From: Setoptus koraiensis
Lineage: Eukaryota > Animalia > Arthropoda
Length of the DNA: 64,000 bases
NCBI GenBank assembly: GCA_048013815.1
Contig: CM106586.1
Span: 21,638,001-21,702,000, forward strand
Direction of reading: 5' to 3'
This document shows, one piece after another, positions 1,068 through 27,384 of this stretch. The notes beneath the pieces were generated by a model, which ran no database searches, had not been told where the DNA came from, and saw nothing but the letters and a program-made list of their open reading frames with translations. The stretch's first letter is position 1; every line of letters begins with the position of its first letter. The position numbers were made by a program, and so were the translations under genes.

Positions 1068-3002
1068 ATGAATAACAAGAAAGCTGAAAACACAACAGAG
1101 GTTGGCAATAAGAATGAAGATGGTCAGAATTCTTCAACAAGTGATACTCATTCCTATAAAGGCGAGACTGTTCGTGGTATCAATTCGAGCGAACTCGACC
1201 ATGTTGTTTATTCAAATACAATCTCTGATGCCGATACATCTGAAACTAAAGATATCACTGTTACGGATATTATCGGAGAATTTGGTTTATATCAGTGCTC
1301 ATTGAGTGTCATAACATTCATTCGTTATGTTTGTGTTGCCATGATGACCAATACTGGGCCACTTATTGCACCCGACATGGATTATTTCTGTCAATTGCCA
1401 GATAATTTAACCAATATTTTAACCATTAACGGCTCCATTTACATTAAAAATCATCTAAACAATTCTTGCCAAGTTTGGATACCTCCATGGACAATAAACA
1501 GTGATTTTGAAAATAAAAGTAAAACTATTTTAACAGAGAACAACACATTTAATTGTATTAATTGGACATATAACACAAGCCTCGTAGGTAGAACGATGAC
1601 AGATGAATTCAATTTAGTCTGTGATAGAGACTGGCTGAGATCCTTATTCCAGAGTAGCGTATCCATAGGTGTAGTGGTAGCATCACTATTCTGGGGTACT
1701 CTATCCGACAAGCGTGGTCGTTACTATACAATGAAGATTTGCTATCTAGTCTCATTCATATCCGGTTTAATATCATTTTTGGCGCCAAATTTCATGATCT
1801 ATGTTATGGCACGATCAATATGCTCATTAGGTGATTTAGGTTTAGTGGTATCATTGGCCACTATACTTGTGGAAAGTGTCGGAAACCAATACAGAGGGGC
1901 AGTGTGTATCATAGTTTATTTGGGTTGGGCAATAGGTGTAATGATTATGCCATGGATTACAGATTATTTTAGAGATTTTAGAGTGCTAATGTTGGCGACA
2001 GTTTTTCTGCACCTTATTACCCTTCCATGGCTTCTGATAAAAAATGAATCTGTCAGGTGGCTATTGATAAATGGCAGATTCTCGGAGGCACTCATAGAGG
2101 TCAAGAGAATAGTACAATGGAACAAATTTTTAGAATTGCACAGATTAACAACTCAGGAATATGCAATCATAGATGATAAATTTGAACAATTAAAGTTACG
2201 TTTTAAGCCAGTCAACGATGGTGAACCCGAACATTTTGACACTGAATCATCGCCATTCAAGCATTGTGGTAATCATGACAAACTGGGTGATAGTTTTGGT
2301 CTAGGTAATGCCAAAGAATGTAAAAGAATGGAGGCCGCAATGACTGTATCTCATGAAACAAAACGACATAGCAATGATGATGAGGATTCACTACTTGCAA
2401 GCTTTGGTAAGATGCGCCAATTGTTTCAGTCAAAAGAGTTATCAATAACAACACTAACCCTTGTTTGGGTTACATTCAATTCTGAGCTTCTGTACATGTC
2501 ATTTATATTGATCAACTCGGACGTTGGAGACAATCTTTATGCTAATTACGCCATGGGTGGACTCATGGAAATTCTCGCTGCCCTCATTAGCTGTGTGATA
2601 ATATCAAATGTAACAAGAAGACTATCATTGACATCGTCATTGTTGTGCATATCTCTCATATGCTTCACCTTGGCATTCGTTTACGAGGATGCAAAGTTAA
2701 TTTTATGGCTACTCCCAGCAGCAAAATTGGCCATATCAACTCTATCGTCATTAGTGTATGTTACAGCCACAGAAATGTTCCCGACTGACTTACGTCAGAC
2801 CGGTTCTGGCGCTTGCGCAACATTTGGTAGTATGGGTGCCGTTGTCGCCCCTTTCATTTGCTCGCAATTAGTCAGTATAATTGGTATGCACTATGTTCTA
2901 ACGCTATTTAGTATATCACCTTTGACTGCCGCCATACTTATACCATTCTTTCTACGTGAGACAAAAGGTGTCGAGCTGACAGATAAATTGGATGAATTGT
3001 AG
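1068..3002 (+). CDS. SLC22-family organic cation transporter (Orct-like, MFS), 644 aa, intronless
   Basis: Single ORF with SLC22 hallmarks: Cys-containing, N-glycosylated first extracellular loop ending 'FNLVCDRDWL', 'GTLSDKRGR', 'ESVRWLL', 'ATEMFPTDLRQTG' and C-terminal 'LRETKG', plus about 12 hydrophobic segments. Confidence 0.93.
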   Translation: MNNKKAENTTEVGNKNEDGQNSSTSDTHSYKGETVRGINSSELDHVVYSNTISDADTSETKDITVTDIIGEFGLYQCSLSVITFIRYVCVAMMTNTGPLIAPDMDYFCQLPDNLTNILTINGSIYIKNHLNNSCQVWIPPWTINSDFENKSKTILTENNTFNCINWTYNTSLVGRTMTDEFNLVCDRDWLRSLFQSSVSIGVVVASLFWGTLSDKRGRYYTMKICYLVSFISGLISFLAPNFMIYVMARSICSLGDLGLVVSLATILVESVGNQYRGAVCIIVYLGWAIGVMIMPWITDYFRDFRVLMLATVFLHLITLPWLLIKNESVRWLLINGRFSEALIEVKRIVQWNKFLELHRLTTQEYAIIDDKFEQLKLRFKPVNDGEPEHFDTESSPFKHCGNHDKLGDSFGLGNAKECKRMEAAMTVSHETKRHSNDDEDSLLASFGKMRQLFQSKELSITTLTLVWVTFNSELLYMSFILINSDVGDNLYANYAMGGLMEILAALISCVIISNVTRRLSLTSSLLCISLICFTLAFVYEDAKLILWLLPAAKLAISTLSSLVYVTATEMFPTDLRQTGSGACATFGSMGAVVAPFICSQLVSIIGMHYVLTLFSISPLTAAILIPFFLRETKGVELTDKLDEL

Positions 3003-4599
3003 CATGAAATTGAAATGGATTGATATACAAGTTGACACACCTTTGCAGAACCCCTTTTGTACAAAACTACATCTATTGTTTAATAATAAATATAGCATAC
3101 AATTGACAATAATTGATCTTCGAGACCAATCGATTTTACCCATATATTCAAGTCTCGGAGTCTCATTCTATTTCTGTAGATACACTTGTGTAGTAGATTA
3201 TTTTTATAGATTTTTGTATGGGGTGGTCGCAAATAGAATTGCATTTGAATTGAATAGCCTTGGCTACCTTCCACAGGGCCACGGTGCTCTGTCAAATGCA
3301 ATTCTCTTCGCAACTCCCCCATATTTGGCTTTTATCACTATATATCATGTGTTTCCAAACTAAATCCTTTCAGTTGCTTAAACTTGCTGTACTAACTGCT
3401 GTTATTCATCTACCTAGATGCAATATTCCTCCTCCATCGAGGAGATACAAAAATTTAAACGGACCAAAGACTGTTACTACGCTATATACATATACTGTAT
3501 ATCACGTGCTGTCCACCGAGCCTTATTCATGTACTTACGCGTTGAGCATCGCATCATGTGACACAATGCAACTGCCTGGATGTATTCGCATTGGATGGGT
3601 AGGAGTAAATTTATGGATTTCATGATTCATCCAGTATTATACCTTCTTATCCTAGGAAAGTATTTTAGGCGATCCTATTCTTAACCTAAAATTGGCACAA
3701 AGAAAAGAGAGAAAAGAAGAAAGAGGAAGAGGGGAATAACGAATAAGTGTTATCAGGGGAGGAAGTAGGAGGGAGGAATAGAGTGATGGAAGTACTGGAA
3801 GAAGTAGATTTGCTAGGGGAGAGGCAGAAGGGAGGAGGAGAGAAAAGGTTGGGAGTTACAGTGAGTTAGAAACAGTACAAGAGAAGATTAGAAGAAGAGA
3901 GAAGGAAGAAATAGAAAGGAAGGAGGAGCATTGAAGAGATAGCAGATAAGGCGAGACAGGACCGTGAAGCATAGAGTGGGACTTGGGATGAAAGCGAGGA
4001 AGGGATAGTAGAAAGACGACAAGGCGGATTAGCGCAGAAAGCTTCCCATTGGAACCGGGCAGGGCTAAAACTATCAGCGGAGTACATGGATGAAGCGGGG
4101 GCGCAGGAACAGACCGAAGTCGATGAAACAACGCAGAAGGGTGAAGAGGGTCAGTACCAATAGTGCTGTTGGATCGGCAGAATTACACAGTGACGCCGCC
4201 GGCTGGTCCGTCCGCGCCTACGACGAGCGGCTCACTCATCCTCAGCGCAGGAGGGCGGACGACGTCGCGTGACTACGAAAAAAAAAAAACACGAGCCAGC
4301 CACGTCCTTCTGTCGACGCCGGTGACGGCCTACCTGACCTAGCACTGGTGCTGTATCGCGACAGGACGGACTCAACCACCAAACGCAGGAGCAAGCCTTG
4401 CGCCGGCTCGCGACAAGCGCGGAGCACGGCGCCGAGACACCGCCAACAGCATCCGCGAGTTCCAGATCCACAGCGGCTCGCAGAGCGCGCGTGCGGAACG
4501 GCGGAAAAAACACCTCCCCAGGCCGCGGCGACGCGCCGCGAGCGCGCCATCGATCCCACGAGAGCCAAGACGAAAGCAGGACGAACAAAGTCCGCTGTG

Positions 4600-7460
4600 A
4601 GCATGCTGGTGTAACGCGGCTCGGAATAGCTGCTTCTTCCCGGCCCCGAAGAATGCCAGCCGAGTCCTCACGCAGGAGCAGCCGGTGACCTTATAAGGCT
4701 ACTAACCCAATCCCCTGGCCCCCCATGCCTAGAGGGAGCTGGCGCCGTGTTAGGCCGATCCAGCGGGAGCCCACAGCGCTATCCCCGCGCCCGCTTTATC
4801 GAGCGGACCACGGGGCCCTGCGCGCTCGACGCTCCGCCATTCTGCTCACGGCCAGCCTTCGCGCACAGCTCTTCGCCTGTGTTGTCTCCGGCATGCTCTA
4901 CAAGGGAGACCTACGATTATCGACGAGTAACCACCATCCACTCTCTGCTTATCGCGAACGATTCGCCCGCCAGTCGTAGTCTGCGCGAAGCATACTCCTA
5001 GACGACATTCCGCGAGCGGCCACTGCCAAGCAGCACGTCACCAGAGCGCCGTCTCCCCGGTAAGAGCCGCTCACCCCCGGCCGTCAGCTTACGCTAGCGA
5101 CCAGGCCGGTTGCTCCGCGGCTGCCACCGCTCGTACAACCGTACCCGCACTTAATGCGCGACGACGGATCCCCTCACGACCTTGATCGCACGGTGACCTC
5201 CAGGGCAGCTGAGCGGTGTCTCACCGACCGGTCTACCTGTTGGCATCGACTACGACCCAATCCAGCTACTTGGGAACCGCAGACCCCTCCTGTAAGCGCG
5301 GTCTGCCATCTTCCCACGCCGGCTCGTGTATGCTCCCTCTCCTCAATACGCAGCAGCACCTACTGCAAGCCCTACCGCCGCGTGTTTCAGGGTTGTGAAT
5401 GCGCCACCTGGCAGCTCTCTGCCGACTCCACCCTATCGGCCCGCGACGGCAGTAGCAGTACTACCGAACTGAGAGATCCCGATCCATCGGCGAAGCCTCC
5501 GCTGCAGACCGGTAAAGTTCTCGCGCCACGTTCGAATAAGCTACGTCTCGCCGCAAGTTCCGCGTGCTTCGTCGCACGGAGCGACATCTGACTCTTTTGC
5601 TGCGGCCTTTGTGGTAAGATCCGCGGGTCAACTATCGGCCTTCCATCACCTCGCGAAGAACGACCCGGCCCTGCCGCGTGAAGGACCTGACAGAGAGAAG
5701 ACAGAGAGAGTAATGCGCGCAAAGACGGAACGCAGACATGAAGAAGACCGATGCAGACGCCATGAGCGGCCTGCGAGAAAAACTTAAGTGTGTACAGGGT
5801 AAGCGATGGAGCCAAGTCGTAACTCCGAGCGAGAGCACAGAAAAGAGTCACGGCGCCGCGCCAGCGTTCATCGACTCAGAGCGGACATGCGTCACGCATC
5901 TCGACCCTTACAGGGCCCATCACTTGTCGAAGTAGCCTCTAAGGCGCTGCTAGTTTCGCAACTGACGACTGTCGCTGTCCCTGCGAGACCCGCATCTAGT
6001 CGCAGCCGATTTCCTTCGAGAGCACACCGCGCAGGATACGTGTACGTGTACTAAGCGGCCCCCTCAAGGTCCCGCAGGCCAGCTGATGACCCATCGAAGA
6101 CCCACCCGCACCACTGTGCGCGCTAGCATTTAGGACCCGCGACACGCAGCGATACAGCTCGGGTGACCCGGATCGCGCTCTCCTCGCCACCAACTGTCCG
6201 TCACTCCCAATCCTCGATACCCCTGCGGGAACCTGAACTCGCCCTCCCTCGCTTCCTAACCCGTTACTGCTCCAGAAGGTTCAAACTCGCCGTAGCCTCT
6301 CCTGCACACCAACTTCTGCGCGTACTTCCGACCCCGGTGGTCGCGAACCGTCGACATGTACATCTGAGTCGCGCGCCCCAGAATAGTCCACGTGCGGCCT
6401 CTCGCGGTCGCTTCCAACTTACGTCCGTCCCTCTAACCCAGTTCCCCCGTTCATACGGCGTCGCAGGTCATCCACGGAACGCCGCGCGGCGTGACGCGAC
6501 TCCTCCCAAAACCCCCCCCGCTCGGACTCGGCTGGACAAAAAGTATCTCTGCGGCCACGTTATACCAGCTACCAATCATTCACACATCCTTCGCCATATG
6601 TTAACCCTTCGACTCTACCCATGAAACATCGCCCAGAGCGCTGGCCACAGTCACAAGGCGCGGAACCATGCTAGTTGCCTCGTATGACCGACTCCAGTCT
6701 ACCTATTAGTGGATATCTCCTCTTCCGCCGCGCGGAAATCATGCTCCTAAGGCCGCACGGCCCCGGCCTTCCTCCTCACGGCTCCCACCCAGCTCCTCTT
6801 CCTACAAGTAGAATAAAAAAAACCTGGCGCGGCGACTTAGACGCACGGCGTAGACCTGTTTATCCTCCGTTTGGCCCTCCTCCCCCTTTTCCCTCGAACA
6901 GCAGCGCTACACCTCCGCGCTACCGTCTACCTGCCGCCGACCCGGGCGGCAAGCATGAATCTCCGTCGCGAATACCCGGCCATGCCTCTACTACGACGAT
7001 ATGTACCCGGCACCCTAACAGGCGAACCCAACCTGTTGTTAAATCAGGCACGGAACTCGCCGACAGTGCTCGAGCCGACACTTTCGCGCGCGCGCGCCCT
7101 CGTGAACCTCGCCGCCCGCGTGTCCTCGGCTACGAGCGTCGACCCGCAGTTGTCCGGCACGACGACTTATGCATGGCACGCCAGCCCGATAGAGGCACGG
7201 AGCGATTTACGACATCTCACGCATGTAGGACGCATTACAAGCTACTACGCCGAAATCTTTCAGGCATAAGACGGAAGCTATTAGCCCTACTCGCTCGCCC
7301 AAAGCCTAGCAGAACGACGATGTACGCAATGACCATCAACATGCGATTGCAGACACGTTCAAACGCTTCGGACTACCGATACCTCATGGCTCGCCAGCTG
7401 CCCTCCCGCGGGCAGGTCCCGTCCGGCGGGGAGCATGCCCTCCGCTGGCCCGTCTGAGAA
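4600..7460 (+). mobile_element. Degenerate LINE ORF2 remnant (APE endonuclease-RT-RNase H; I/R1/Tad-like architecture)
   Basis: Colinear motif ghosts across frames. APE: 'VLTQE' 4664, 'GDL..SNHHPL' 4905-4943, 'LDRTVTS' 5181, 'GIDYDPI' 5242 (cf. GSDHxPI). RT: 'GK(D)PRVNYRP' 5613-5641 with a 1-nt deletion, 'EVASKA' 5929, 'KVPQAS' 6066, 'IAL' 6172, 'YCSRRFKL' 6265, 'KYLCG' 6541. RNase H: 'MTDSS' 6684, 'AEIMLL' 6732, 'RIPGHA' 6969, 'GTELADS' 7047. Spacing is irregular and motifs are imperfect. Confidence 0.55.
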
Positions 7461-7609
7461 CGCATCGAGACAGCGCTACAGCCGCGCTCAGCACTTGTGA
7501 TCGTTGACGCAACGATCACCAAAGGTCGTCAGTCTTCCCACTCTTCCATTCAACGCCTGAACATGGCTCGTCCATAGCTACCATTGCCTATGTCTTCACT
7601 CCCGATCCG

Positions 7610-10020
7610 AGATGACGCGTCCCGGAGCTACGGACCTTTCCGGTTGCCGCCCGCCATTTGACCATCGCCCCCCTTCTCTAAGCGAGCCCGGCTCTATATC
7701 GCGCATACTATCAGACTGTACTGCTCAGCTCCACGGGCGTACGAGGCGCGAAGACGCCAGCGCCAGTGTTTCGCCTCCTCATCGAGGCAACTCGCCGCCC
7801 CCCCGCGGACGCCTACCGCGCGAACGGGAGGCAGAGTGGACTACGTCGCCCCCCATCCGCGCACGAAGCCCTCTCCCCGTCCCCTCCCAGGCATCTCGTC
7901 CAGACTGCCTAATCACTCGTGCAGGTCGACGCCGAGAAGAACTGAGTTCCCCCGAGCGACTCTCTCTAAGTGAGGCGTCTAGCGTTCTGTGGCCCGCCCT
8001 AATCCAGAAAATATATCTCTACGACAACACGCCATGACGACTGCTATTGACCACCGACACGCCCGACTTACGCACGCGGCTACCCTCGCAAGAACGCCCG
8101 TAACCGAAACTGAGCACTCGCCGGCATTCGCCTGGCTCTGAGCCTGTTGAAACCAGAGACGAATTCTTAAAATAAAAGTAAAAAAAATTAAAAAAAATTT
8201 TAATCGATACTCGGCCTGAGACAGACTCGGGGGACATGCGTACCACCCCTACGTCGCCCGCACGGAACTGCCTGCGGTAGCAGCCGCCGGAGCGACTGCC
8301 GGCAAGCTCCGGGTTTCTGCACGCAAAGAACACGAGGCAGATCACGCTAGCCCCACGCAGTGGGAGTGTGGTAGGGAACTTAGTCGCAATACCACCCCGC
8401 GACGAGAACTTCGAGCTCAAATCCAGCCACCTGCGACCAACGTCCTACCAACCTCGCCGGAGGACGCGTCCGCGCTGCGGGGCGAGTCCGTCCTTGTTCA
8501 GACTGACGCCTCTTCACCCGCCTACGCACTCGGAGAGCGGACTCGGCTTTCCGCCATTTCACGCCGTAAAAACCTGCTAATCACCTCTAATCAGTCACCG
8601 TGCCGATGGCTGTCGCACCACTTCTCCGATCGTTACGCGTGCCATGGCCCAACGTACCCAGAGAATAGGGAGACCACAGCAGTCGCGGCGGACGGCTTCA
8701 AAGTTAACGCGAGATGTGATCGCTCTGAAGGGAGCACGCACGGGACGGCGCCCCGGCGACGTGCGGTCGACGGAACCACTTACTAAGTAGCTGACTCTAA
8801 GGTGCACTAAGTCCAAGATTCCGGGCCTCCCACTTCTCCCTGCCCGGAAGCCGAGATCCCTCGTCGCGCCCCTAGTCGATACCGCTCGCTGCGAACAACT
8901 ACTAGGCAACCAGCACAACCCGACGGCGACACAGCGACCTACCCCCGTCCCACGGATTACACCGAGTACGCCATAAGTTATCGGCAGATTGAGGGCATCT
9001 GAGCGCGCGCTGCTTGCACATCGGAACGTCACCGGCATATAGACGAACAGAGTTGAAGGTGGCTGGGAATTCCGCCTGGTTGGACAGCGCTGTAGGGGGG
9101 CCCCCGGGGCACTGTTAGCTGCTTAGACGGCGGATCCCGGATTCGACGGTCGGCCAGCCGCTCAGGGTCTGACTTTGCGCGTATGGCTCTCAACACACAG
9201 TAGGACCAGACCCTCTGGCTGTCGCTTAACACACCCACTCGCGGTGCGCAACGCGCTTACGCGTGCCGGAGTCACTCCGAATAACCTTAATATCAGTTCA
9301 AGTGTCAGCAATAAGGCCCGGTTCAAGAACCGAAACGACGAACGAAGGACTCGATGTCGACGGCGTGCGAAAAGATCCCGCAGGCGGGACAATCGTCGCT
9401 CGCGGTGAGAGCCGACACGTGGAAAACTCTCAGTAAGGCACCATTACCGGCGAATCCTACTCCACTCGCCGCGCGGTACTCCGACGGTGCGAAAAGGGCC
9501 TGGTCGTATTTCCTCAGCGGCCTCGCATATAACAGCCGGCGCTTGGGAGCCGTCCCCAGACGGCTGCAGAAAGGGACCCCATAGAGACCCATTTCGAGCG
9601 ATAAACTGAAGCGCCCCTAGCATAAAACTCAGAGAGAAAGGAGAGAGAGCATCACGATACCGACCCGCCAGAAGTACCTGCACGCTAGTACGTAGGTTGC
9701 GGCACGGAGACCCCTACCGGGCGAACCCGGCCGACCATCCTAGGGCTTCTAACCCCTCGGGGTCAACGGCGCCGTCACCCCGGAGGATGCATGCGTTATG
9801 CCTCCAAACTAAACGCCGATTCCGCGCAATGAAGGCTCCGAAACCCGCACTGAGAGCCTAGCCTTAGTTGCGGATAGCATCCTACCCACAGAACCACGCG
9901 GCACTTGCGCGCACGCCGCACGGATATGTAAAGGCCGTCTCACGCGAGCTTAAGGTAGAATTACTCGCGCATACAGGCCACCTTCTGCATGGAGCCGAAT
10001 CCCAGCAGCCGCAGAGTTCC
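7610..10020 (+). mobile_element. Degenerate Ty3/gypsy pol remnant (RT-RNase H-integrase)
   Basis: 'IYLYDN' 8011 (cf. VYLDD); RNase H 'VLVQTDASSPAYALG' 8490-8534, 'ENRETTAVAA' 8661, 'FKVNARCDRS' 8697; integrase-like 'QTKRRFRAMKAPKPALRA' ~9805 (cf. PQTNGxxERFNRTLK). Order and the ~1.3 kb TDAS-to-integrase spacing fit gypsy. No LTRs seen. Confidence 0.5.
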
Positions 10021-10329
10021 TGCATGTCGGCGAGCTAGCCCGAAATGTCCGGCCGACCCCTCGCCAATTAATCCCACTTCTGGGCCCTACGCGTGCCAGG
10101 CCGAATGCTGGGCGCACCAATACGACCCGCGTCCCGCGCGACGGCGCCGAACCGACTGTCGCAAGAACAGGAGTAGGGACATGTTCCGACACAGCCGTTC
10201 CCATTTCGTAACGTGACACTCGCCCTTTCTATGAACGCGGTATCGACGATACGCCGCGCCGGCCTTCACGCAGGGAAACGAACGCAGCACTTCCAAAGGC
10301 CTGCTCCCTCATCCCGCAAGGTCTAAACG

Positions 10330-12800
10330 CACTAACCCTCTTACCCACGCCGTCGCTGACTGTGGCGGTCGTCGTCTAAGAGTCTTGCCATCGTCGCAGC
10401 CTACGCCCAGTTTTAGCCCTGCTCTCCCCTCTGCGTCGATCGCGTCCACCCTATACCCGTGCCATTAACTCCCGCGGATCTCTCGGCCGTGCTACTGTCC
10501 TACAGCTTCTGCAGATCGTCTGTTCCCGCGTATCCTCGGAACGAACGTCGCACGAACCGACGCTTGCCGCCTCCTGACTACGACCCAGGCGAGCCTGCCC
10601 GAGACCTGCCTCCGGACGCCCGCTCGCAGAGGCTCGGCAGGCCGACGCCTCGCTGACCTTCGTAATCAGCTCGGGGCGCACCCGCCGCTCTATGTATAGC
10701 CGCCGCGGTGCGATCCCACCCACAGCCTGGCGACGTCTCCATGTCACGTGAATATGATGCATGCTGGTCCGTAGTCACTAACCGGGCCTCTTGAATGCAA
10801 TAGCGTTCTCTACTTTCCCACCCTGAATAGCCGCACCTAATTCGTTAACCCTGTGTACCTTCTAGCTATGCCGCTTTGGCTGCGTAGCACATCCTCGGTA
10901 TACGACCTCCACCTCTTAGTCGTCCCCCCAGTACAGACATGAACTAACCTCGTCATGGACAGCCGCACTCGGGCACTCTACCGCGCCACGCAACAGGTTT
11001 CGCGCGCCCCCCTGACGCCAAACCTCGAGCCAGTCAGAATCCGTCCATCCCCCCTTTCTCTGCGCTCCCAAGATCGCTAGCGGAACGCCACGTCATCCGC
11101 AATTATCCTCCACCCAGTGCCCGAGGCCGCTCGCGCCCTCATACTTCTACTGCTCATGATCACCCACTCCCTGTCTAGAGACAATGCCTACGCGGTTGCC
11201 GGCCGACCTCCGCTGCGTTCCCTAGACCCGTGCTCCGCGCATCACGGACGACCGGCTCCCTGACGCGGAGGGCGGTCTCGAGAACGACTCGGCCGCTCGT
11301 TCGACTCCGCGTCCCCGACCCACCCGTCCATACGTGTAATCGAGAAGCGATCTGAGCCGAACGTGCCGTGATAGCCGTGGCTCAGAGCACGACGACCACG
11401 CTCAAACTATGATCCCCCGCCCTCCGCTATCTGATCAGGCTACTCACACGCTCTGGGATGTATCGCACCGCCCACTTGACTGACAAAGCCACCGGTGCCC
11501 CGGACGCACGGACCGCGTGCTGCCGAGGGCTTCCACTGGCAGTCCGTCCCGATCATCTGTAAAATAATCACAACGGTCGCATCTGTACGGCCGTTTCCTG
11601 TGCTACTCGATAATATCATGCTCCTCATCTAGCACAGTCGCTCGTAACTTGCGAAATGTAATCGCGCGACGCGGTGTTCCGTAGTGGTCTTCGCCCAACG
11701 CTAAGGATAACACCTTGACGACCACTGACTCTGTGGAGTCGTACACCGAGAGATGTGATCTCCATGGGGCGGCCCCCGGAGTCTAAGACAGAGCCGTAGC
11801 AAACCACGGCGGCGCCCCGCCCGCTCCAGCGTCGCGACTCGTCAAATGCGCATTGAGTAGGTTTGTTGGGGCAGCGAGTTGGGTTGAACGGGCTACGAGA
11901 GACGATAAAAACCAACCCGTACGACACCTTCCACGCGGCGCTTGACCTCACCCAGAGGACAATAATACTGCTCCCCCTCGGCTGACCCGCACCTCCAGCA
12001 CACTGCCACTCAACAGGAAGCCGACGGCGTCGAGACATTGCCGTACCCGAGCGTGCCACCGACAGCGACGCGAGGCAACAGTCACGGAAAAGCGAATCCC
12101 AATTGGCATCGTTCCAGCGACGGGCGCGACACCTCGCGTACCGCCGGCTCTTCGCCACTGGAACTCCTAAACGCCTCTTACTACCACTCCTGAGACCGGT
12201 CAGGTGTGGAGCTCCTCAATCTCGACTTAATACTACTAGGCTCCACGCGCCTGTTGGAGTTATGGAAAAGCCGACGCCCCCCGACCGCGCGTCAGCCCGC
12301 ATCCTCCTTCTGCGCACTCCCCTTGGCTCCGCAAGTCCCTCTGCTATGCGTCCATAGACATACCGGACGTACTATATCTGAAAAACGCTGCGCATTCGTA
12401 CAACGGAGTAGCAACGCGCGGCCGAACGACGCTGCCTGAGCTCGGTCGAGGCGACTCTCGGGCGCCCTATCCATCGCGTGACCGCGCGACGAGCCAGTCC
12501 TTAACGCACGCGGAATACTCCACCGGCTCATCTGTACTGACAATCCGGTTCCCGGTTCAGCTCCGCGAACATTCCTGACACTTCGCTATTCGTCCCCGCC
12601 GTCCGCGCTATCCTCTCCGACCGAGTCTTCCATCGAGTCCTCCAAGCAACCAGCGCGGTTACGAGAAGCAAGACTAGTTGAGGACGTCCCGCTCACGCCG
12701 CAAGGAAGACTACGAGTCGCGCGCCGACTGACTCGCCAGCGCCCGAACGACGCCAGTCAAGCCAGCCGCGGTGCAAACGACATTCAACACGCCGCACGAT
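10330..12800 (+). mobile_element. Degenerate BEL/Pao pol remnant (RNase H-integrase)
   Basis: 'HAVADCG' 10346 (cf. HxFxDAS), 'AAYA' 10396, 'DRVHPIPVPLTPADLSAVLL' 10438 (cf. SRVAPLKxLTIPRLELxAA), 'WRRLHV' 10728 (cf. WRHV), 'HP-IIL' 11094, 'RNVIARRGVP' 11652, 'HGG...RLVKCAL' 11805-11855, 'EY(L)HRL' 12513, 'RLVEDVPLTPQGRLRVA' 12671 (cf. GRIxxVxPGxDGxVRVA). Order matches BEL/Pao. Confidence 0.55.
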
Positions 12801-14599
12801 AGCGCGCCAGCAAGCGGCTGCAACACGCTAGCCGCCGCACGCACGCTGCCCAGCCGCTAGACGCCACATATCCTCGACGCCCAGGACGGAATCTGCAGTC
12901 CACCCACAACACCAGTCAAGCCCGACGGCGTCTAACCGCTCTAAGTGAGCACTGGCAAGCACTCAGCGCCGCTCCTTCCGACCGAGCCCCAGCCCGGCCC
13001 TCCCTCTCGTGCCTCCCCCCTCGTCGGTCTCCTGTCCGACCGCCTCCGATTCACGAAGGCTAGCCCTCTGGGACCGCAGAGAAGCCCCCTTAGCCGTGGC
13101 TTAACGAAACTGCTGCTACCCGTACAAGTCCACGAAGTAGCGCCCCAGAAGCCGGCGCCGCCATTTCTCAGCTCGGCTGATTGTCCGCTCCGCTGCGTGG
13201 CCACCGCTGCCCATGTCACCAACTCCCTCGAAATTTGCTCATAGCCCATCTGTTCGCTTCGCCTAACACCCGCAACGGGCCTAGTTGCTATGCGTCCACC
13301 CATGCGAACCTAGTACGCGGGCGGCTATCTCTGCGCAGACCTCTGCACGGCCTCAAAACCCCTACCTCGCCCGTCTCGCGTGCGGCCGCCGCCCCTGCGC
13401 GCGCACACGCCGAGAGGTGGTCCGCTCGGCGAGCTCACGCGCGATCGTCCGTCTCACCGCAGAGCCCTGCGCGTGGCGCCTGCGCCGCATCCAGACCTTA
13501 ACTGAGTAAGCTCCTCGCTTCTCGACTATGCTTACAGCGACGCTCGCGCCCTCGCAGCTGCGCTACGCACGCATCTCAGGAGAGCTCCGTAGATGAGGAC
13601 CCACGAGCAGCGTAAACGATCGAGCTAAGCTTTACCGCGCGCGATACACGACAGCGTAAACGCACTCTACGTACAACAGTCCTAGGCCTGGTCCAGGACG
13701 GATGCGGGAAATACATGAAGCTCAATCGGCATCAGGTGTAAGGATAGGCGGCACACGGCCAAAGGGAGCCTTCGCTTGCCGCGAGTGCCGACGCCGGAGC
13801 CGCGAGGAGCAGCATAGCGCCGTCTCGCCACCAGCCTTCGCGCGCCGCATGCGCCACGTGCAGGTCCAGCTCTAGCTCGCGAGTCGCTTGCTCGTAGCCA
13901 ATGCGTAACGGCTCAAAAGTCCGGCGTCTCACAGGCCCGCGTGAAGTTACTAATAAGAAACCGTCACAGTAGGGAGCAGCCACACGACGTGAACGAGAGT
14001 GGAGGGAGCAAGAGCGAGATCCTAAGGGGGCTAAAAGCCGTTAGGAAAAGGAATAATAGAGAGGTTACGTGACAACGCGAGAAGATACCGTAGATGCCAG
14101 AAAGGAGCAGAAAGAGCTAGGACGTAAGGCATCAAACGAGATGAAGACATGAAGCAACACGGAGGCGCGGCGGCACGAAGGGAAGCAGAAGCGTCCAAGA
14201 ATATAGTGAAAAAGACAGCTCAGGAGAGGTAAGAAACTACGACCGATTCCGGACCTGAGCAGGCCCGACAAAGACAACGAAGGAACAAGCCGAGAGACGA
14301 AGAGTGGACGAGGGAGGCGGTACAAGGTCGCGAACCCAACGCGTAAACCGCAGGCGTTCGTGAGTCCCGCGAAGCGCGCCTCGCGCTACAGCTACACGAC
14401 CTGACAACGCCACCTAAGACAGCTCCTACCGACCGCCCGCTTCCGCAGCGCCGCGAACGCACTCCAGAACGGCTCGCCAACGGACGTGCACGTCCCCGCC
14501 TACGCGGAATCAAAGCTCGAGGATACAAATAGCCCCCCTGAAACCGCCGCAGAGCCCCGGACGCCCGAGCCCACGCACCCAAGTCACGTTAGACGCACG

Positions 14600-17500
14600 T
14601 CAGCCTACCCGTCTTCCCCACTATTCGCACCGCGACCTCCCGCTCTCCGGACGCCCCAATAAATAAAACCCTACCGCCATCTCACGCAGGAGCGGAGCTG
14701 CACGCCCACACGTGCGAGCGCAGGAAACGCGGCTGACCCTGACACCGCTCCGTCAGCTTCAACAACACCGCGCAACGCCCTAGCACGACGCGCACGGCTG
14801 CGCTAGACCGCCGAACCCCGGCTCCGTGGCCTCTCAGAATCCCGGCAGGGTGTTCGGCCGCCCGCCCGAAGGCCGTCCTTCTGCACGCCCCCTCTACGAA
14901 TCACGTCCCCCGAAGCCTCCCGACGTAGTCGCCACGACGGTACCGCCAGTTATCAGCATATACCCTACGCCTTCTCCTAGTCCAGGAAAGTCTAGTATTC
15001 CGAGGCCACGTGCACAAACCGGCCCGAGATCGGAGCCGAGGCGCCGTGGCGTTACGACTCACGTGACTCGAACGCTCGTCCGCCACGTCATCAATATGCG
15101 TGAGTCACGCGCAAGGCGGGCGCAGGGCGATTGACGCTGTCGAGTCCTCCCCACACCCGTGTGCAATGGCGTCGCATCAGCGGGCCCACCATACCGCCTC
15201 TAGCACCGAAGCTTGCCCGCGAGAACGCACACTTGAACTGAAGCGCACAATGGCTCCTAGCATGCGCACGTAACGTGCCTTTTCGTCCGCATCCTCCCTA
15301 TCCGCTAGCGATCCCTGTCGCGCAGTCGAACCGTTGCAATACCGAGAGGCGCCCTTAGACTCTCTCCCTGACTGAAAGTCTCCATCTTCTCCATGTATAT
15401 AGAATCAGAGCGGCCACCAAGAACTTCGCCCCGACCAATCAGTTAGAGGGAGGTGGGTGGGTTGAAGAACGCGCCTACGCCATGGAGATGAACGACAGCA
15501 TACCAGCGGCATTGTCGCCCCGTTGCCACGAGAAAGACGCGCACACAGACACACGTCAGACCCTACTAACTCTCACCGCGCGTTACGTCCGTGCACGCAT
15601 ACGCCCTGAAGCACCGCCGATCGAACTTGCACCGCCTCCGACAACGCACCGGCGTTCTCGATCGCGATAGTGAACCCTCAATCGACGAAACGTTTCTCCG
15701 TCAGCACACTGGGGCACACGTACAGAACCGCCACCCCCCCGTCATGTGGGCGCTTAGGCATCACCAGGCGACGCCTACGCCCCGAAATACTGCGACTATC
15801 TGCGATACTACGCTTTTCAGTATCAGGCTACCGTCCCCGAACTGATGTCTTGCTGGTATGCGGACTAGCGAACGTACCGAGACGGCCTGGCGCCGCCGCG
15901 TCGGACCTGTAGTCGAAAGAGAGGGGAATGGGCTCGCATGCGCGGCGGCACAGGTTTTCCGATACTTCCAGCTACGAGACAACGCTCAACTCCTGCTATC
16001 CTAAGGACGCCACCGCCCACAGTTAACGCAGACACCGTGCCCACTGTGGAGGATCAGCGTGGCTTCGACACGCGCGATGCTCGACTCGACTGCGTACGCT
16101 GAGAACGCGCGTGAACCCCTCGTCGAAGCCGCTCAAAGCACTCATTCGAACGAGCTGTAGTATCTAACCATGCGGCCGCTGCCTGTAGCCTAGCTCCCAA
16201 GCTCCGCGCGCATTTCAAAGCGAGCCCTTCTAGAAGGCCAATGCCGAACCCGATTTGGCCGTCTACCGCTTTGTCCTCGCCGCCCTCCTGGCCCCCTTCC
16301 TAGACCTGTCGTCGATGACTGACCGAGTTCTCCTTGTAGTCTCGTATACGAGCAGTGAAGCCGTTCTCGGCCCCTAATCACGAGCGCCGACCCGTGCGAG
16401 TACCACCTGCCACTCGTCCCGACTCCCTCCAACTCGGGCCCCTGTCCTCCCCTCGGCGCCATATCTGGATGATTACACTGGAGCATCTAGCGCCCTATAG
16501 CGGCCTTGACCCTTGTCGACCACCCCTCCTCCAACAGCCGCTACGCCTACCTGTAGCGCAACCGGATCGCCACCGACGTCGGTAATCCGCCGCCCCTGAT
16601 CCCTTTAGCTGTCCAACAAAGAACAAAACGCACCCTACTATAATTGGCCTCCGAGCTTGTACTTAACGGGACCTCATACTATCGCGCCCCTCCTTGCCTA
16701 TGCGGACACGACATATCCAAATACCAGCTTGCCCCGCTGCGGTGTTTAAGCAAGGGTAACGACCTCAGAGCGATCGCCGATCGCGGCAGGTCCCTGCATC
16801 GCTATCGCAGCTTTCCTGACATCACACCTACCTACCGATACTACAGAGCTACTTGATTCCCAGAGCGGAGACGAAAACCGACCAGGGAATTGCTCCGAGC
16901 GAAACGGGGAAAGCTCCAGTCGGCGCGCGTTCATCACCGCATAGCGTACGGAAGTGGCGGCACCGACCGACTTACCCGAGCCTATCTACGCACCCCGGTA
17001 GATCGCCAATGTCCCTACACTCCCTTTAAGCGCCTGCACGAACCGACGTACTGCACGAAGTCCAGAACACACTCTCCTGGCTACAGTAACCGTGCCTAAC
17101 GTGTGCCCGTCTGTTAAAACCATCGACACCGCTCACACGGCCGCGATCAATGGCCCTACTACGATAGCATGTTCTACGCGGCCATGGAACGCCGAGACTC
17201 CAAGTTCTCAGTGCCCCTACGTCACTCTAATTAATCATCGAGCCCTACAGCTCAGTTCGCTCCGCTAATCTAAACCGCGTGGCTCCTTCACCGGCCCTCC
17301 GCCGCTCATGCTGCGTCGGCGAAGCATGCGGCCGCTGATACCATATGCGTACTGTAGGAGGGGCTGCACGCCCTGACTGAACACGCAGACAAGGCCCACC
17401 CTGGATACAAGTGAGCGACCCGCAACGTCACCGGGACCAAGCGCCAACCACCTACGACAGCGTCGTCTCAGGAGAGAAGAAAACATAAAGAAAGCCAGGG

Positions 17501-18000
17501 AGATGAACGTTGAACCATGATCAGCAAACCGTACTATCCAGCCCGACGCTTTTGACGGTAGCGCTCGATCCGTCGAAAAACTAGTTCGTGCAGCATTAAA
17601 ATAACGGCGGGTCTGGCACTCGCCGCCACTGCCTTGCTCGGCTTAATATCAACCCGACGCGACCGCAACGAACCTTGCACCACGCGTCAGTGTCATTCTC
17701 GTAACCCCCTATATTAATCGTCCTCCCCCTTCCCCCGTCCGAACAGGACCCACATCCCTCTGAGAGGTCAGACGCTTATAAACCTTCATCCGGCCTTCGC
17801 GAAATCCGGTTAACCGCACTCAACTGTGCACACAGCGTCGTATGATGCGCCGCCCAACCTACCGCACCGGAAAAAACGATGGACGACGAGCCCGAGATCT
17901 ACGGATTAGCGAAAGACACGGAAGCAACAGTCGTCAAAAGTGGAGGGACAAGAGACTCGATGAGCGCCGCAACCCGCGCCAAGGGGATAGCCGTAGACGC
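14600..18000 (+). mobile_element. Second degenerate LINE ORF2 remnant (APE-RT-possible RNase H)
   Basis: 'LTQE' 14681, 'VISIYPTP' 14949, 'GD-x-NA'-like 15126; RT 'APFLDLSSMTDRV' 16291-16329 (cf. AVFLDLSKAFDRV), 'LGPL' 16433, 'YLDD' 16462; 'FDGS' 17551 (possible RNase H YTDGS). Confidence 0.5.
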
Positions 18001-18285
18001 TATGAAGAACTACACTTAATTTTATGAGGAAGTTGCAACATATACATCTCTGACTATTCGCTAGCTGCTCAGTCAGATTCTGGCCGATTACCGATGTTTA
18101 AGTGAAATTAGGGTTGTACTCATGCAGCGTCGCAAACAATCTAATATTAAGTCTATTATATTGATAAGTAATTGACGATCCTCCAGTTCATGTTGTCATT
18201 TGCTTATTTAGCTAGTCCAATTTCAAATCCTCCCACTCAAGTTTTTCGTCAAGTTGGTTTTGATAAGAATTTCTTTAAGGCGAAT

Positions 18286-18952
18286 ATGAGGGCAATTGAG
18301 AGTTCGATAGTAGCCATAGCTACTCTAATAGCACTTTCCAGAATAGTGGAGAGTGACTATAAGCCATTCAGGGTTGAAGAATGTTTAGGTAAGTTTACAA
18401 AATTCTAATTGTTGCTATGACAAAAAGCATCGCACCTTTATTAAATGTATTCATCATTTTTTTCCATTTCCAGATCACAAAACTAAAGCATTAGCTTTTC
18501 TGAACACAGTATACATATCAGATTGCCCTGGAGGTATGAAAGATGGAAAATGTATTTTGAAAACTGGCAGTTCCAGATCAATCACCATTGAATTCACACC
18601 CAGTAAGTTTGTTCATTTACGTTCGTAGTGATCTCAAATAGAGGCTATGCCATGAATTTTATATTTTTTGTACTGCACTTTTTTCTCAAATTCAGAGACA
18701 GAATTGAAAAGTGTTAAAGTGGCGATCCATGGAAAAAAATTCATGTTAGCGATACCTTTCAACCTAAAACCTGACGAGGCCTGTGGCAACTACGGGCTGA
18801 ACTGTCCTTTGGAACCAAATGTGCCGGTAAAATTTACGCTATCATTACCCATTCTGCAAGAATATCCGAAAATTTACGTAAAAGTTCAGATAAAATTGTC
18901 TAGCAGAGGCAAACAAGTTTCATGCATTCAATTTGATGCTGAGATTCAATAG
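18286..18952 (+). CDS. NPC2: NPC2/MD-2-related lipid-recognition (ML) domain protein, mite group-2-allergen-like, 162 aa, 3 exons
   Basis: Exons 18286-18388, 18474-18602 and 18696-18952 join in frame through GT-AG introns. N-terminal signal peptide, six Cys, and 'ACGNYGLNCPL...LPILQEYPKI' ML-domain pattern. Confidence 0.88.
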
Positions 18953-19114
18953 GAATATAGCTGGGATAAGAAAGACAAAAAAGATAACAAAGACTTTACT
19001 GAAATTCTGTTTCTTTATTTCATTAGTAAACTTATCAAATTAATCAATAAAAGTTCGATTCAACTCTTGTTTAGTAACTCGTTCCTTGTTAACTACATTA
19101 ACAGATTATACAGA

Positions 19115-22100
19115 TTATAAAGCTGTGTCTCCGGGCTGGTATTGATAGTCGTTCCAAACTGACGGAGTTAGGGGCTCTCTATCTACCCCACTCTTAGGGG
19201 GTCGTTTTCTAGCGAAGAAACCAAGCTATAATCAGGAAAGTTTGTGAGTAATAATTTCTAGTTAGAATACAGGTAGAATATCAAACATTAAATTTAGCAT
19301 CGCTTAATCAGTTACTTACCCATCTAAGAAATAGTGCCAGAAGGATGAATAATAAAATACCTGCCAGAATAGAAACAAAAATTACCCAAGATGGGACGAG
19401 ATCTTGAACTCCGAGGCCAGTTGTGTGGATTTGCGTCACAACTGAATAAGTGTAAGGAGGATAAGTTAATGAGCTCACATTGTAGGGTAAAGATTTCACT
19501 TGCGCAACTAGTTTTGAGGATATATCAAACTCCTCCATTGATATATAATTCAGGGTATCTTCATAGAGACGCGATCTTATTTTGATGTGCACAATCTCAT
19601 TGTTCCCCAGATTGAAAACATTACACTCAAATCTTGTGCATTCTGTTGGACCACATGAAAGTAGATTTAGGTTTTGTAGAATTGAATTATCTACAGTTGT
19701 CGTTGTTTGCCTTCTATCTCTTCTGGGAGGGCTTGGAGGGGGCAAATAATTAGAATTGATGAAATTTCCGCGTTGATACTTGAGATTTGACGGGTTTATA
19801 GCATTGTTAGGAGCCGGTTTACACTTTACTTTTTCGCTCGTTAGAGGTTCATCTACCAGGTACAAAAGATAGCGACCATCTTTATTCATTGTAGGCCATA
19901 GAATTGTTAGAGCTATATCGTTTATAGTGCTAGGGCCACGATTTTGAAGCTGATAGATATGATACACTTCCGGGCCTATGTCTGTCTCAACATCCTTATT
20001 GGGGTTGATGTTTTTTGTTGAGTTGTGAACAACAAGCGCTGGCGCCGAGTTACCACTTAATGTGAGATCTACATGAACACGAATAGGGATGCCAATAGCG
20101 ACCTGATTGTCCTCAATATTTCGTTCAGATTCAGCATTAGTACTATTAACATTAGCTACGAATGTGAAGTCAGGTGCCGAAAATACTCCACGGGCGGGCT
20201 CAGTGAGAATTGAAAACTTAATAGCCTCGCCGGCCACTTGGGGGTTACCTAGTTCGCAGGTGAGTATATTCACCCCGGTTTGATCTGGACGGGAGCCATA
20301 ACAGATGGGGTATGCTTGATCTGGCCTCGTTTTGTTGATTGTGATATAGTTGATAGTGTGAGGCATATTTAAGTAAAACATTGATTCGAAGGCATCCTCT
20401 CCATAATTCTTTACATTCACATCGAGAATCAATCGCTCGGCACTTCCTATTGTATATTGATCAAGATTGGGGTTTATGCTCAGCTTCAAATCTGGAACAC
20501 ATATATTATCCGGTCCACAGTTTTTTTGAATTGTTGCCACTTTTGTCAACTTATTGGGCACAACCTTATTCAGAACTGGTCTCAGCTTTGTTTCATCCAT
20601 ATATGTGCGGGGTTCTACTAGATTGTATTCGACATCGATTTGAAGAGGGGTCAGCTTGTCGCGAACATTTCGCATCAAGTAGGCCTTGAATGCCTTGCAT
20701 GTGTTAGAATCTTTCGTAAGCATTTGAGTATATTTGTCCTCATTAACACCCTCGTTGTTCAAGAAAAACAATCGTGGAGTTTCTTTGGTGGCAGAATCTA
20801 ATTTAGTTTTGAATGAGAATTCTAACCTTTGGTCTGTACCATAGCCGTTATACTTGACGCAATACTGTACATTTATGCAAGAAACAGGTGTGCTGTTACT
20901 ATTCAAGATGCACCTTTTATCATCCAGATTGAAGTTTTCCGGCTCAAATCTGAACGATGTTGTCACATTCACAATTGGTCTGGCCTTGAAAAAGAAAACC
21001 CTATCGGAATTGTAATCACCTACAAGTAAATCAGGATAATTGTTGTTATCAAGGTCTAGACCTCCTGACAGAGAGAATCCGAATGCTGCCAGACCTGTTT
21101 CGCCTTTGATGTCCTCCGCGTAAATAACTTGATCGTATTCAGATTTGAGTCCTGATCTACTACCGTAGAAAATGTAGATGGCGCCATGATTGTTTGGACC
21201 GTCATAGGGAGCGCCAACAGCTATATCTTGATATCCATCTTTGTTGAGGTCGCCACAATTAGCTATTGCACTGCCAAATCTGGCCTTGTTCTTGTGTCCA
21301 TCAATGGATCCTTTGATGGTCAATTCGTGTCTCATGCTTTGAGTAGCTATGTAGATCCTCCCTCTTTCGTAGTGAGGCTCTTTATGCGATATGTTATAAA
21401 AGAGAGGAGCACCGATAACCAAGTCATCAAGTCCATCACCATTAACATCAGCAGTTATCACAGTGTATCCAAAGTATGCACCCATCTGTTCTCCTGTAAT
21501 ATTTTGTGATACATTCATTTTAGAATTTGCAATGATCACCTTTCCTAGCAGATTTGCTCCGCGTGGCATGCCTATGGCAACATCATATTCTTGACTAGAG
21601 GAAAAGTGTCCGAGAGTCATTGAATAGCCCAGGTAAGAATCGTCCTCTGATTCTGGGCCGGGGGAATTCGTGGATATTCTTTTATCATTGACTAAATTAT
21701 GACTGTATACTTGTCCTTGCCAAACATGAGCACCCGGAGCGCCAATCATTAGGCGTTGGCCATCCTGGAAGTTTGAATTTGTTTGTTTAGTTGTTCAATG
21801 AATTGTTTACATTATTTATTTCTATTTCATCATATGCAAATAGCATTATTTTGAAGCTAACTAACCTTAGTTATAGCTGACGAGAATCCGGCTTGGCAAT
21901 ATCCTAATCTTTCGTGTCCATATTGGTCTACGAAAAATTGATAGAGAGTTGTGTTAGCGGCAACTACATACTATCGTATCAGTTATGGTGCGATGTGTAA
22001 ACATAGCAAAGAGACCTACCTACTTGTCGACATGGAGAGTATTCAAGAAAACCTGTAAAAGAACCTCTTGAAACCCAGCACGTTCCAACTGGATTCTTTC

Positions 22101-26644: not shown

Positions 26645-26915
26645 TTCAGAACATAATAAGCAATGTAACATTTGTAATCTTGTAAATCTTATGTATTTCG
26701 AACCTGGCGCCTCTTTAGTGCGCATCACTAAATAAGCAAGCTTTGTACAATATAAAATAAAGTCATGTGTGAATCGTTGTCCTTCAACCTATCTCAAAAC
26801 ATTCACATTATTTTATTCTCAGGGAAGCTCCATTTTCTCGGTGCTAATATATATCAAAATAAATTTGGATCTATCAATCTAAACTTTGAAGTATCCTTAA
26901 TCGAAGGCAACAATT

Positions 26916-27281: not shown

Positions 27282-27384
27282 TCTTGTGGTCAACATGCTT
27301 AGATGTCAATCATACGTTTATTAGAAAAATAGTACATTAAAATTCTGTTGAACAACAATATTAGCAACCAAATCATGGAGAGTC

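What the first reader, a model, noticed from the sequence alone, without database searches (positions are those of the whole stretch)
3690..18030. 14-kb compositionally foreign, gene-free block inside a gene-dense, AT-rich genome
Seen: GC jumps from ~37% to ~60%, CpG is abundant, no intact gene is present, and the block is far larger than most intergenic gaps here (often 100-500 bp). Knowledge: old resident TEs usually drift towards host composition. Inference: sequence this decayed yet still GC-rich probably did not decay in place. It is either acquired, already-degraded DNA from a GC-rich donor (tick-like or fungal) or a chimeric, noisy or computationally generated segment.
Basis: partly seen in the sequence, partly recalled or inferred. 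Interest (0 to 1): 0.8.

Follow-up and report, generated by a model that had tools for sequence, protein, structure and literature searches.

The report
Unsupported 14-kb junk block in assembly
The 14.3-kb GC-rich, gene-free block is real in the assembled sequence, but it is missing from every public read set examined and reads like patchy random letters, so it is most likely an assembly artefact and not mite DNA or a foreign acquisition.

Summary
GC steps from 0.39 to 0.61 and back to 0.36, CpG o/e is 1.22, and there is no gene. The exact block is 3702-18008 (14,307 bp).

The block is not supported as part of the organism's genome.
- Contigs from four public runs (up to four studies, at least two data sets) match 18009-21000 with no differences.
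- Leftwards they continue with 27 letters that occur once in the whole genome, at 3675-3701, plus 'TAG'. So they join the two flanks directly.
- No indexed run holds more than the flank half of the test stretch.

The block's statistics are not those of natural DNA.
- It fits a first-order Markov chain, whereas eleven natural control stretches all show clear higher-order structure.
- It has no repeat excess, no codon periodicity and no Pfam domain.
- It breaks strand parity.
- Its tetranucleotide signature is uncorrelated with both the AT-rich flanks and this genome's own GC-rich non-coding zones.
- Nothing similar was found in plasmids, phages, GTDB genomes or JGI metagenomes.

The genome is probably Setoptus koraiensis, assembled from PacBio CLR reads with Flye. 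The likeliest origin is a junk stretch from one raw long read that polishing could not remove.

Biological interest is low. The result is useful as a quality flag.

The parts
1068..3002 (+). Left flanking gene: single-exon MFS / SLC22-like transporter (644 aa)
   Evidence: Pfam Sugar_tr 7e-28 and MFS_1 7e-27; period-3 signal 8.5
3675..3701 (.). Last 27 letters of genuine left flank. The public contigs carry exactly these letters, then 'TAG', immediately before window position 18009
   Evidence: Loose-end consensus in X1-X4; the 27-mer occurs once in the window and once in the whole held genome
3702..18008 (.). The block: 14,307 bp, 61% GC, C 35% / G 25% / A 22% / T 17% on the + strand, single copy, absent from public read contigs; it stands in place of the 3 letters 'TAG'
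3702..4200 (+). Purine-rich onset (80-85% A+G) with GC rising gradually from 0.42 to 0.62: a composition ramp, not a sharp junction
4278..4289 (+). A12 run, longer than any run in 100 first-order Markov simulations (maximum 9)
8160..8205 (+). AT-rich islet containing the only tandem-repeat call in the block (8167-8199, score 50)
13950..14330 (+). Second large purine-rich patch (A 0.37-0.41, G>C). Together with 5700-5850 it makes purine content three times more variable than in a homogeneous chain
18009..21000 (.). Genuine right flank: matched over 2,992 bp with 0 differences by one contig in each of runs X1-X4
   Evidence: table 8
18286..18952 (+). Right flanking gene: two-exon ML-domain (NPC2-like) gene. 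Exon 1 starts at ATG 18286; exon 2 lies in ORF 18668-18952
   Evidence: Pfam E1_DerP2_DerF2 3.9e-15 on 18668-18949; ATG and GT donor read
19308..21749 (-). Integrin alpha gene (context only)
   Evidence: Pfam Integrin_A_Ig_1/2/3 and FG-GAP

Best explanation
The block 3702-18008 is not part of the mite's genome as it exists in the animals. It is sequence in the published assembly that no reads support. In the organism, the MFS/SLC22-like gene and the ML-domain gene are neighbours 979 bp apart, joined as ...GGCACAAA-TAG-ACTACAC....

Most likely route (inferred, not shown): the assembly was built by Flye from raw PacBio CLR reads. One raw read that crossed this site carried a long junk (non-templated, very low quality) stretch, and it was used as backbone for the draft contig. 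No other long or short read aligns inside the junk, so neither Flye's polishing round nor NextPolish had anything to correct it with, and it survived unchanged.

The ramped purine-rich start, the loss of only three true letters, the strand-asymmetric base use and the lack of any structure beyond neighbouring letters all fit a signal or base-calling process. They do not fit DNA that evolved in any organism.
For: Reads:
- A test stretch made half of block and half of flank is held at a share of exactly 0.50 by the four best runs and by no run at more.
- Their contigs match 18009-21000 with no differences and run on leftwards with CTATTCTTAACCTAAAATTGGCACAAA+TAG. The 27-mer is unique in the genome, at 3675-3701.
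- Depth is zero over 15100-17857 in all four runs.

Statistics:
- Likelihood-ratio tests for the block give order 1->2 z=1.9 and order 2->3 z=0.5. Natural controls (three AT-rich flanks, five native GC-rich zones, phage D29) give 8-95 and 3.3-21.
- The ratio of trinucleotide to dinucleotide signal is 0.03 in the block against 0.11-0.72 in the controls. Simulated 15-30% read error leaves that ratio almost unchanged.
- Repeated 12- and 14-mers are at Markov expectation (8 vs 7.7; 0 vs 0.7). Native GC-rich zones have 124-325 repeated 14-mers against about 1 expected.
- Reverse-complement parity of 3-mers is r=0.34, against 0.79-0.98 in controls.
- The tetranucleotide signature has r between -0.07 and 0.04 with all native DNA, while native GC-rich zones correlate 0.85-0.92 with each other.

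Content and similarity:
- No period-3 signal, no Pfam domain, no RVT_1 match in a six-frame scan of the genome, no Rfam family or tRNA.
- No similar DNA or protein in plasmids, phages, GTDB genomes or JGI metagenomes.

Assembly history:
- Contig C2 is 24,533,333 bp. This equals the N50 of 24.53 Mb reported for the two-chromosome Setoptus koraiensis assembly, which was made from Sequel II CLR reads with Flye 2.6, one long-read polishing round and NextPolish (PMC11920263).
- Raw long reads are known to carry highly erroneous regions unsupported by other reads, and these degrade assemblies (bioRxiv 10.1101/674036; PMC6833143).
Against: - Logan contigs show presence, not absence. They prove that the empty site exists, not that a filled allele is absent from every animal.
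- I could lay reads on one junction only, and only contigs, not raw long reads.
- Run ids are coded. That X3/X5/X7 are the project's own Illumina, Hi-C and CLR runs is an inference from three runs sharing one sample in 2025.
- X1 and X2 look like one data set filed twice, and X3 and X4 give contigs of equal length, so independent support may be as low as two data sets.
- At about 496x long-read coverage it is somewhat surprising that an assembler kept a single-read insertion.
- I know of no published description of CLR junk with exactly this composition.
- The weakest natural control (26000-39800) has order 1->2 z of only 8.3, or 4.6 after 15% error. The statistical gap to poorly structured natural DNA is therefore moderate, not absolute.
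Confidence: 0.75

Rival explanations
1. A real but rare (private) insertion. In one or a few of the more than 100,000 pooled wild mites, a double-strand break between the two genes captured 14.3 kb of exogenous DNA with loss of 3 bp. One long read from that molecule was built into the assembly, so the insert is seen only as an unpolished raw read.
For: Losing 3 bp ('TAG') at the site with no target-site duplication is what end-joining capture would leave. The sample was a large wild pool with 1.13% heterozygosity. Contigs cannot exclude a rare allele (tool note).
Against: The insert does not look like natural DNA. It has no structure beyond dinucleotides, broken strand parity and no repeats. 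Natural GC-rich DNA keeps an order 1->2 z of 10-45 at 15-30% simulated error. There is no domain relic and no match anywhere. The 500-bp composition ramp at the left edge is not how a captured fragment begins. Block words are absent from the contigs of all indexed runs laid here.
Confidence: 0.1
2. Sequence generated or altered by software, for example a filler, a shuffled stretch, or a block planted as a control. It would have been put into the record after sequencing, not derived from any molecule.
For: The block is statistically a first-order Markov chain, the kind of output a dinucleotide-preserving shuffle or simple generator gives. It is absent from all read sets.
Against: The composition is patchy, with purine-rich patches, an A12 run and a 45-bp AT-rich islet. 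A homogeneous generator or a global shuffle would not produce these. The length of C2 with the block (24,533,333) rounds to the published N50 of 24.53 Mb. Without the block it would be 24.519 Mb. So the block was already in the published assembly. No step of the described pipeline writes random letters.
Confidence: 0.08
3. A chimera with contaminant DNA: a stretch from a GC-rich microbe, fungus or the host plant joined into the mite contig by library ligation or by the assembler.
For: Mites were collected in bulk from pine needles, so foreign DNA was present. GC of 61% is typical of many bacteria and yeasts.
Against: Both flanks are adjacent in the real genome. A ligation or assembly chimera would not return to the same base. 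GC-rich microbial DNA is mostly coding, yet the block has no period-3 signal, no ORF beyond chance and no Pfam hit. The control phage D29 gives a period-3 signal of 16 and an 853-aa ORF. There is no match in 7.3 Gb of plasmids, GTDB genomes or JGI metagenomes.
Confidence: 0.04
4. A native feature: an island of decayed retroelements on one strand (a piRNA-cluster-like archive, as another first reader proposed), or one of this genome's own GC-rich non-coding zones.
For: Consistent C>G and A>T skew along one strand and A-runs that could pass for poly(A) tails. The genome does hold native GC- and CpG-rich gene-free zones of 13-53 kb.
Against: No reverse transcriptase or any other domain was found, and there is no other copy in the genome. 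The signature is uncorrelated with the native GC-rich zones (r about 0), while those correlate at about 0.9 with one another. The block lacks their large repeat and palindrome excess. It is absent from the read contigs.
Confidence: 0.03

Closest known systems
Unsupported (zero-coverage) insertions in long-read assemblies, caused by very low quality or junk segments of raw PacBio/Nanopore reads. This is the problem addressed by read 'scrubbing' tools (DASCRUBBER, MiniScrub, yacrd).
   Same: A stretch present in the draft that no other read supports, with correctly polished sequence on both sides that is contiguous in the real genome. It is immune to polishing because nothing maps to it.
   Different: At 14.3 kb it is very long for such a segment, and it survived about 496x coverage. 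I could not inspect the raw read, so the link to a specific read is inferred.
Horizontally acquired DNA or captured filler DNA at a repaired double-strand break (for example NUMT- or EVE-type insertions)
   Same: A compositionally foreign block at one site with a small deletion (3 bp) and no target-site duplication.
   Different: No donor, no coding relic and no natural higher-order sequence structure. It is absent from the population's read contigs.
This genome's native GC- and CpG-rich non-coding zones (earlier notes s1-318879, s1-321327, s1-367145)
   Same: Similar GC (0.5-0.63) and CpG o/e (1.1-1.5), and gene-free.
   Different: Native zones are strand-symmetric, full of short direct and inverted repeats, and share one tetranucleotide signature (r 0.85-0.92). 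The block has none of these, and its Karlin delta* distance from them is 0.20-0.24.

Membership tests
Long-read assembly artefact (unsupported insertion) | Independent reads join the two flanks directly | tested here: met
   Contigs of X1-X4 run from 18009 leftwards into 'TAG' plus the unique 27-mer of 3675-3701
Long-read assembly artefact (unsupported insertion) | No read support inside the block | tested here: met
   Zero depth over 15100-17857 in four runs, and no indexed run holds more than 0.50 of the words of a half-block, half-flank stretch. Caveat: these are contigs only, and only the right 2.9 kb of the block was tested
Long-read assembly artefact (unsupported insertion) | Assembly built from raw noisy long reads, with polishing that cannot act on uncovered sequence | tested here: inconclusive
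   PacBio CLR + Flye 2.6 + NextPolish according to PMC11920263. The genome's identity is inferred from C2 length = N50 and the two chromosomes, not from an accession
Long-read assembly artefact (unsupported insertion) | The block is traceable to one raw read | not testable with these tools
Horizontal transfer / acquired foreign DNA | Recognisable similarity to a donor lineage (DNA or protein) | tested here: not met
   No Pfam domain. No hit in plasmids or phages, GTDB genomes or JGI metagenomes. Eukaryotic donors (tick, fungus, plant) could not be searched directly
Horizontal transfer / acquired foreign DNA | Present in the recipient's genome in independent samples | tested here: not met
   Only the empty site was seen in four runs
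TE island / unistrand piRNA cluster | Fragments of transposon proteins (RT, integrase, gag and so on), or copies elsewhere in the genome | tested here: not met
   A six-frame RVT_1 scan of the genome gave 60 matches, none in the block. No Pfam family in 64 segments. The block is single copy, with no LTR or TIR
Native GC-rich non-coding zones of this genome | Shared oligonucleotide signature and excess of short direct and inverted repeats | tested here: not met
   r about 0 against 0.85-0.92 among the zones, and repeated 14-mers 0 against 124-325
   TpA o/e 1.03, CpA 0.85, TpG 0.91, CpG 1.22: mild and not RIP-like

The most novel reading that the evidence does not exclude
The block is a real, very rare insertion in the wild mite population: 14.3 kb of DNA with no natural-looking sequence structure and strong strand asymmetry, captured at a break with a 3-bp loss. 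That would point either to a donor of a kind absent from all collections searched or to long non-templated DNA synthesis in an animal germ line.
Probability: 0.04. Interest if true: 0.75.

Novelty: not a real feature. Interest (0 to 1): 0.1.

Why it matters
As biology it matters little, because the two flanking genes are ordinary neighbours about 1 kb apart.

As quality control it is useful. A chromosome-level public assembly, probably Setoptus koraiensis GCA_048013815.1, appears to contain at least one 14.3-kb stretch that its reads do not support. Blocks like this invite false claims of horizontal transfer, foreign islands or piRNA clusters. Three first-stage readers each built a different story on this one.

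The case also gives a cheap recipe for spotting such blocks without reads:
- no signal beyond first-order Markov;
- broken reverse-complement parity;
- no correlation with the host's oligonucleotide signature.

A zero-coverage scan of the whole assembly would show whether there are more.

Tried and rejected
- Search of the whole 14.3-kb block against the window's own genome: not scored, too many letters. Repeated in three pieces, which found only self matches.
- Repeat searches: no direct repeats, LTRs or TIRs inside the block; one weak A-rich tandem array.
- Rfam at E<=0.1 and ARAGORN: nothing.
- Pfam on the 7 longest ORFs and on 64 stop-free segments of 80 aa or more: only DUF575 at E 0.003-0.005, below its cut-off and consistent with chance for that many tests. 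Segments under 80 aa were not scanned.
- RVT_1 six-frame scan of the genome: 60 matches, none in the block.
- blastn (distant mode) against plasmids and phages: no match. One search failed on a length slip and was corrected.
- Longest stop-free segment (260 aa) against GTDB genomes and JGI metagenomes: pattern hits, but no tblastn relative.
- An exact 28-mer from the block in both collections: none.
- A GC-rich plasmid control by accession was not in the collection. Phage D29 was used instead.
- Earlier notes of this scan were searched for similar blocks elsewhere in the genome. Only the native GC-rich zones turned up, and they proved different.
- The large protein searches, structure prediction and complex prediction were not used, because nothing in the block looks like a protein.
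Full report
**1. Observation**

The composition step is real and large.
- In 1-kb windows GC is 0.35-0.39 up to 4000, 0.57-0.63 from 4001 to 18000, and 0.36 from 18001.
- The right edge is sharp. The left edge is a ramp: from 3702 the sequence is 80-85% purine, and GC climbs from 0.42 to 0.62 over about 500 bp.
- Inside the block the + strand has C 35%, G 25%, A 22%, T 17%, and the skew keeps the same sign in every 1-kb window.
- CpG o/e is 1.22, against 0.88 in the rest of the window.

No gene is present.
- The longest stop-free stretch is 260 aa. That is what first-order Markov simulations of the block give (232 +/- 45; 18% of simulations reach 260).
- The period-3 signal is at noise level (median 1.0), against 8.5 for the neighbouring transporter gene.
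- No Pfam family reaches its cut-off in the 64 stop-free segments of 80 aa or more.
- No Rfam family and no tRNA were found.

The flanks are ordinary genes: a single-exon MFS/SLC22-like transporter at 1068-3002, a two-exon ML-domain (NPC2-like) gene from 18286, and an integrin alpha gene at 19308-21749.

**2. Is the block in the organism?**

I gave look-up of sequencing runs a stretch made half of block and half of flank (15100-21000). The four best runs hold exactly 0.50 of its sampled words, and no run holds more.

Laying X1-X4 on the stretch gave these results:
- One contig per run covers 18009-21000 with no differences.
- Depth is zero over 15100-17857.
- Each contig continues leftwards for about 3 kb. 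The last 30 letters before 18009 are CTATTCTTAACCTAAAATTGGCACAAATAG.

The first 27 of those letters occur once in the window and once in the whole 48.8-Mb genome held here, at 3675-3701. The reads therefore join 3701 to 18009 through the three letters TAG. The block is 3702-18008 (14,307 bp), and it stands in place of those three letters. Without it the two flanking genes are 979 bp apart, which is typical for this compact genome.

Caveats:
- These are contigs, which show that the empty site exists but not that a rare filled allele is absent.
- X1 and X2 look like one data set filed twice, and X3 and X4 give contigs of the same length, so independent support is between two and four data sets.

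**3. What kind of sequence is it?**

It is single copy in the genome and has no internal direct or inverted repeats of 30 nt or more.

Repeated k-mers are at the level of a Markov simulation: k=12, 8 observed against 7.7 expected; k=14, 0 against 0.7.

Likelihood-ratio tests of Markov order:

| Sequence | order 0->1 z | order 1->2 z | order 2->3 z | tri/di ratio |
|---|---|---|---|---|
| Block | 62 | 1.9 | 0.5 | 0.03 |
| Three AT-rich flank stretches | 61-68 | 8-24 | 3.3-7.7 | 0.12-0.39 |
| Five native GC-rich zones | 113-146 | 58-87 | 11-21 | about 0.5-0.6 |
| Phage D29 coding DNA | 132 | 95 | 15.5 | 0.72 |

The order 3->4 z for the block is 1.0.

Adding 15-30% simulated substitution and indel error to the controls halves their scores but leaves the tri/di ratio almost unchanged. 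The GC-rich controls stay at z of 10 or more. A noisy read of natural GC-rich DNA therefore does not reproduce the block.

Reverse-complement parity of 3-mers is r=0.34, against 0.79-0.98 in the controls. That range includes D29 DNA, which codes on one strand.

The block is not a homogeneous chain either. Purine content in 150-bp windows varies three times more than in simulations. There are purine-rich patches at 3702-4200, about 5700-5850 and 13950-14330, an A12 run at 4278, and a 45-bp AT-rich islet at 8160-8205.

**4. Is it native GC-rich DNA?**

Earlier notes of this scan report many GC- and CpG-rich gene-free zones in this genome.

I fetched five such stretches. They have GC 0.46-0.63 and CpG o/e mostly 1.0-1.5, with GC skew mostly near zero. 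They carry a large excess of repeated k-mers (124-325 repeated 14-mers against about 1 expected). They also share one tetranucleotide signature, with r 0.85-0.92 between zones and about 0.4 with AT-rich DNA.

The block correlates with none of them, nor with the flanks (r between -0.07 and 0.04). Its Karlin delta* is 0.20-0.24 from the zones and 0.13 from the flanks. So it is foreign to everything native that I sampled.

**5. Is it acquired DNA?**

No support was found.
- No protein-domain relic.
- No reverse transcriptase in a six-frame scan that reads through stops. The scan gave 60 matches elsewhere in the genome and none in the block.
- No blastn match in 7.3 Gb of plasmids or 2.3 Gb of phages.
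- No relative of the longest stop-free segment in GTDB genomes or JGI metagenomes.
- No exact 28-mer match in either collection.

The argument against such a source rests on the statistics in section 3.

Two other first-stage readings of the same stretch are not borne out.
- "Four retroelement classes head-to-tail" (s1-341935) fails on the absence of any domain.
- "RIP-like signature" (s1-341949) fails on TpA o/e 1.03, CpA 0.85 and TpG 0.91.

**6. Where the block probably came from (inferred)**

The genome held here has two pieces, and C2 is 24,533,333 bp. The only published two-chromosome eriophyoid assembly with N50 24.53 Mb is Setoptus koraiensis, GCA_048013815.1 (PMC11920263). Earlier notes call the host an intron-poor eriophyoid-type mite.

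That assembly was made as follows:
- More than 100,000 pooled wild mites.
- Sequel II CLR reads (about 496x), Flye 2.6 with one polishing round, two rounds of NextPolish with Illumina reads, then Hi-C scaffolding.
- Three runs were deposited, which fits the three runs of one sample seen here (X3, X5, X7).

C2 with the block rounds to 24.53 Mb; without it, to 24.52 Mb. So the block was probably already in the published record and was not added later.

Raw long reads are known to contain highly erroneous stretches that no other read supports, and these harm assemblies built without scrubbing (bioRxiv 10.1101/674036; PMC6833143). A draft contig that follows one such read keeps the stretch, because polishing needs reads that align to it.

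This route accounts for the following:
- the precise return to the adjacent base;
- the loss of only three letters;
- the ramped onset;
- the strand asymmetry (nothing ever copied the other strand);
- the absence of structure beyond neighbouring letters;
- the absence from all short-read contigs.

The depletion of GG, CC and TT (o/e 0.72-0.89) would fit merged pulses, but that is only a lead.

What is shown: absence from the read contigs, direct joining of the flanks, and non-natural statistics. What is inferred: the species, the single-read origin, and the failure of polishing.

**7. Rivals**

| Rival | Odds | Main points |
|---|---|---|
| Real private insertion captured at a break | about 0.10 | Fits the 3-bp loss and the pooled sample. 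It needs an insert that looks like no natural DNA. |
| Software-generated or planted sequence | about 0.08 | Fits the Markov statistics. It does not fit the patchiness or the contig length. |
| Contaminant chimera | about 0.04 | Does not explain the return to the same base or the lack of coding signal. |
| Native TE island or GC-rich zone | about 0.03 | Contradicted. |

**8. Verdict**

I class the block as not a real feature, with low biological interest and some value as a warning about this assembly.

Noticed in passing
L005, L006, L007, L009, L010 (G000:C2 10.74 Mb, 18.04 Mb, 18.42-18.46 Mb, 5.13 Mb): The genome's native GC- and CpG-rich non-coding zones share one strong tetranucleotide signature (r 0.85-0.92 between zones millions of bases apart, about 0.4 with AT-rich DNA). 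They carry 100-300 times more repeated 14-mers than a Markov model predicts. This points to a common, genome-wide process shaping them.
   Followed up: partly
The genome scanned here is probably that assembly. If so, other read-unsupported blocks may exist in it.
   Followed up: partly
runs X1 and X2: Two runs filed under different organism labels (A and B), different studies and different years give almost the same number of contigs (393,237 and 393,260) and the same 8,128-letter contig at this locus. They are probably one data set deposited twice, or one species under two names.
   Followed up: no
runs X6, X8, X9: Three 2023 runs labelled with a third organism hold 7-28% of the words of 15100-21000.
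   Followed up: no
window 3217-3323: A 32-nt inverted repeat (84% complementary, 43 nt between the arms) lies just downstream of the MFS/SLC22-like gene's stop, in genuine flank DNA.
   Followed up: no
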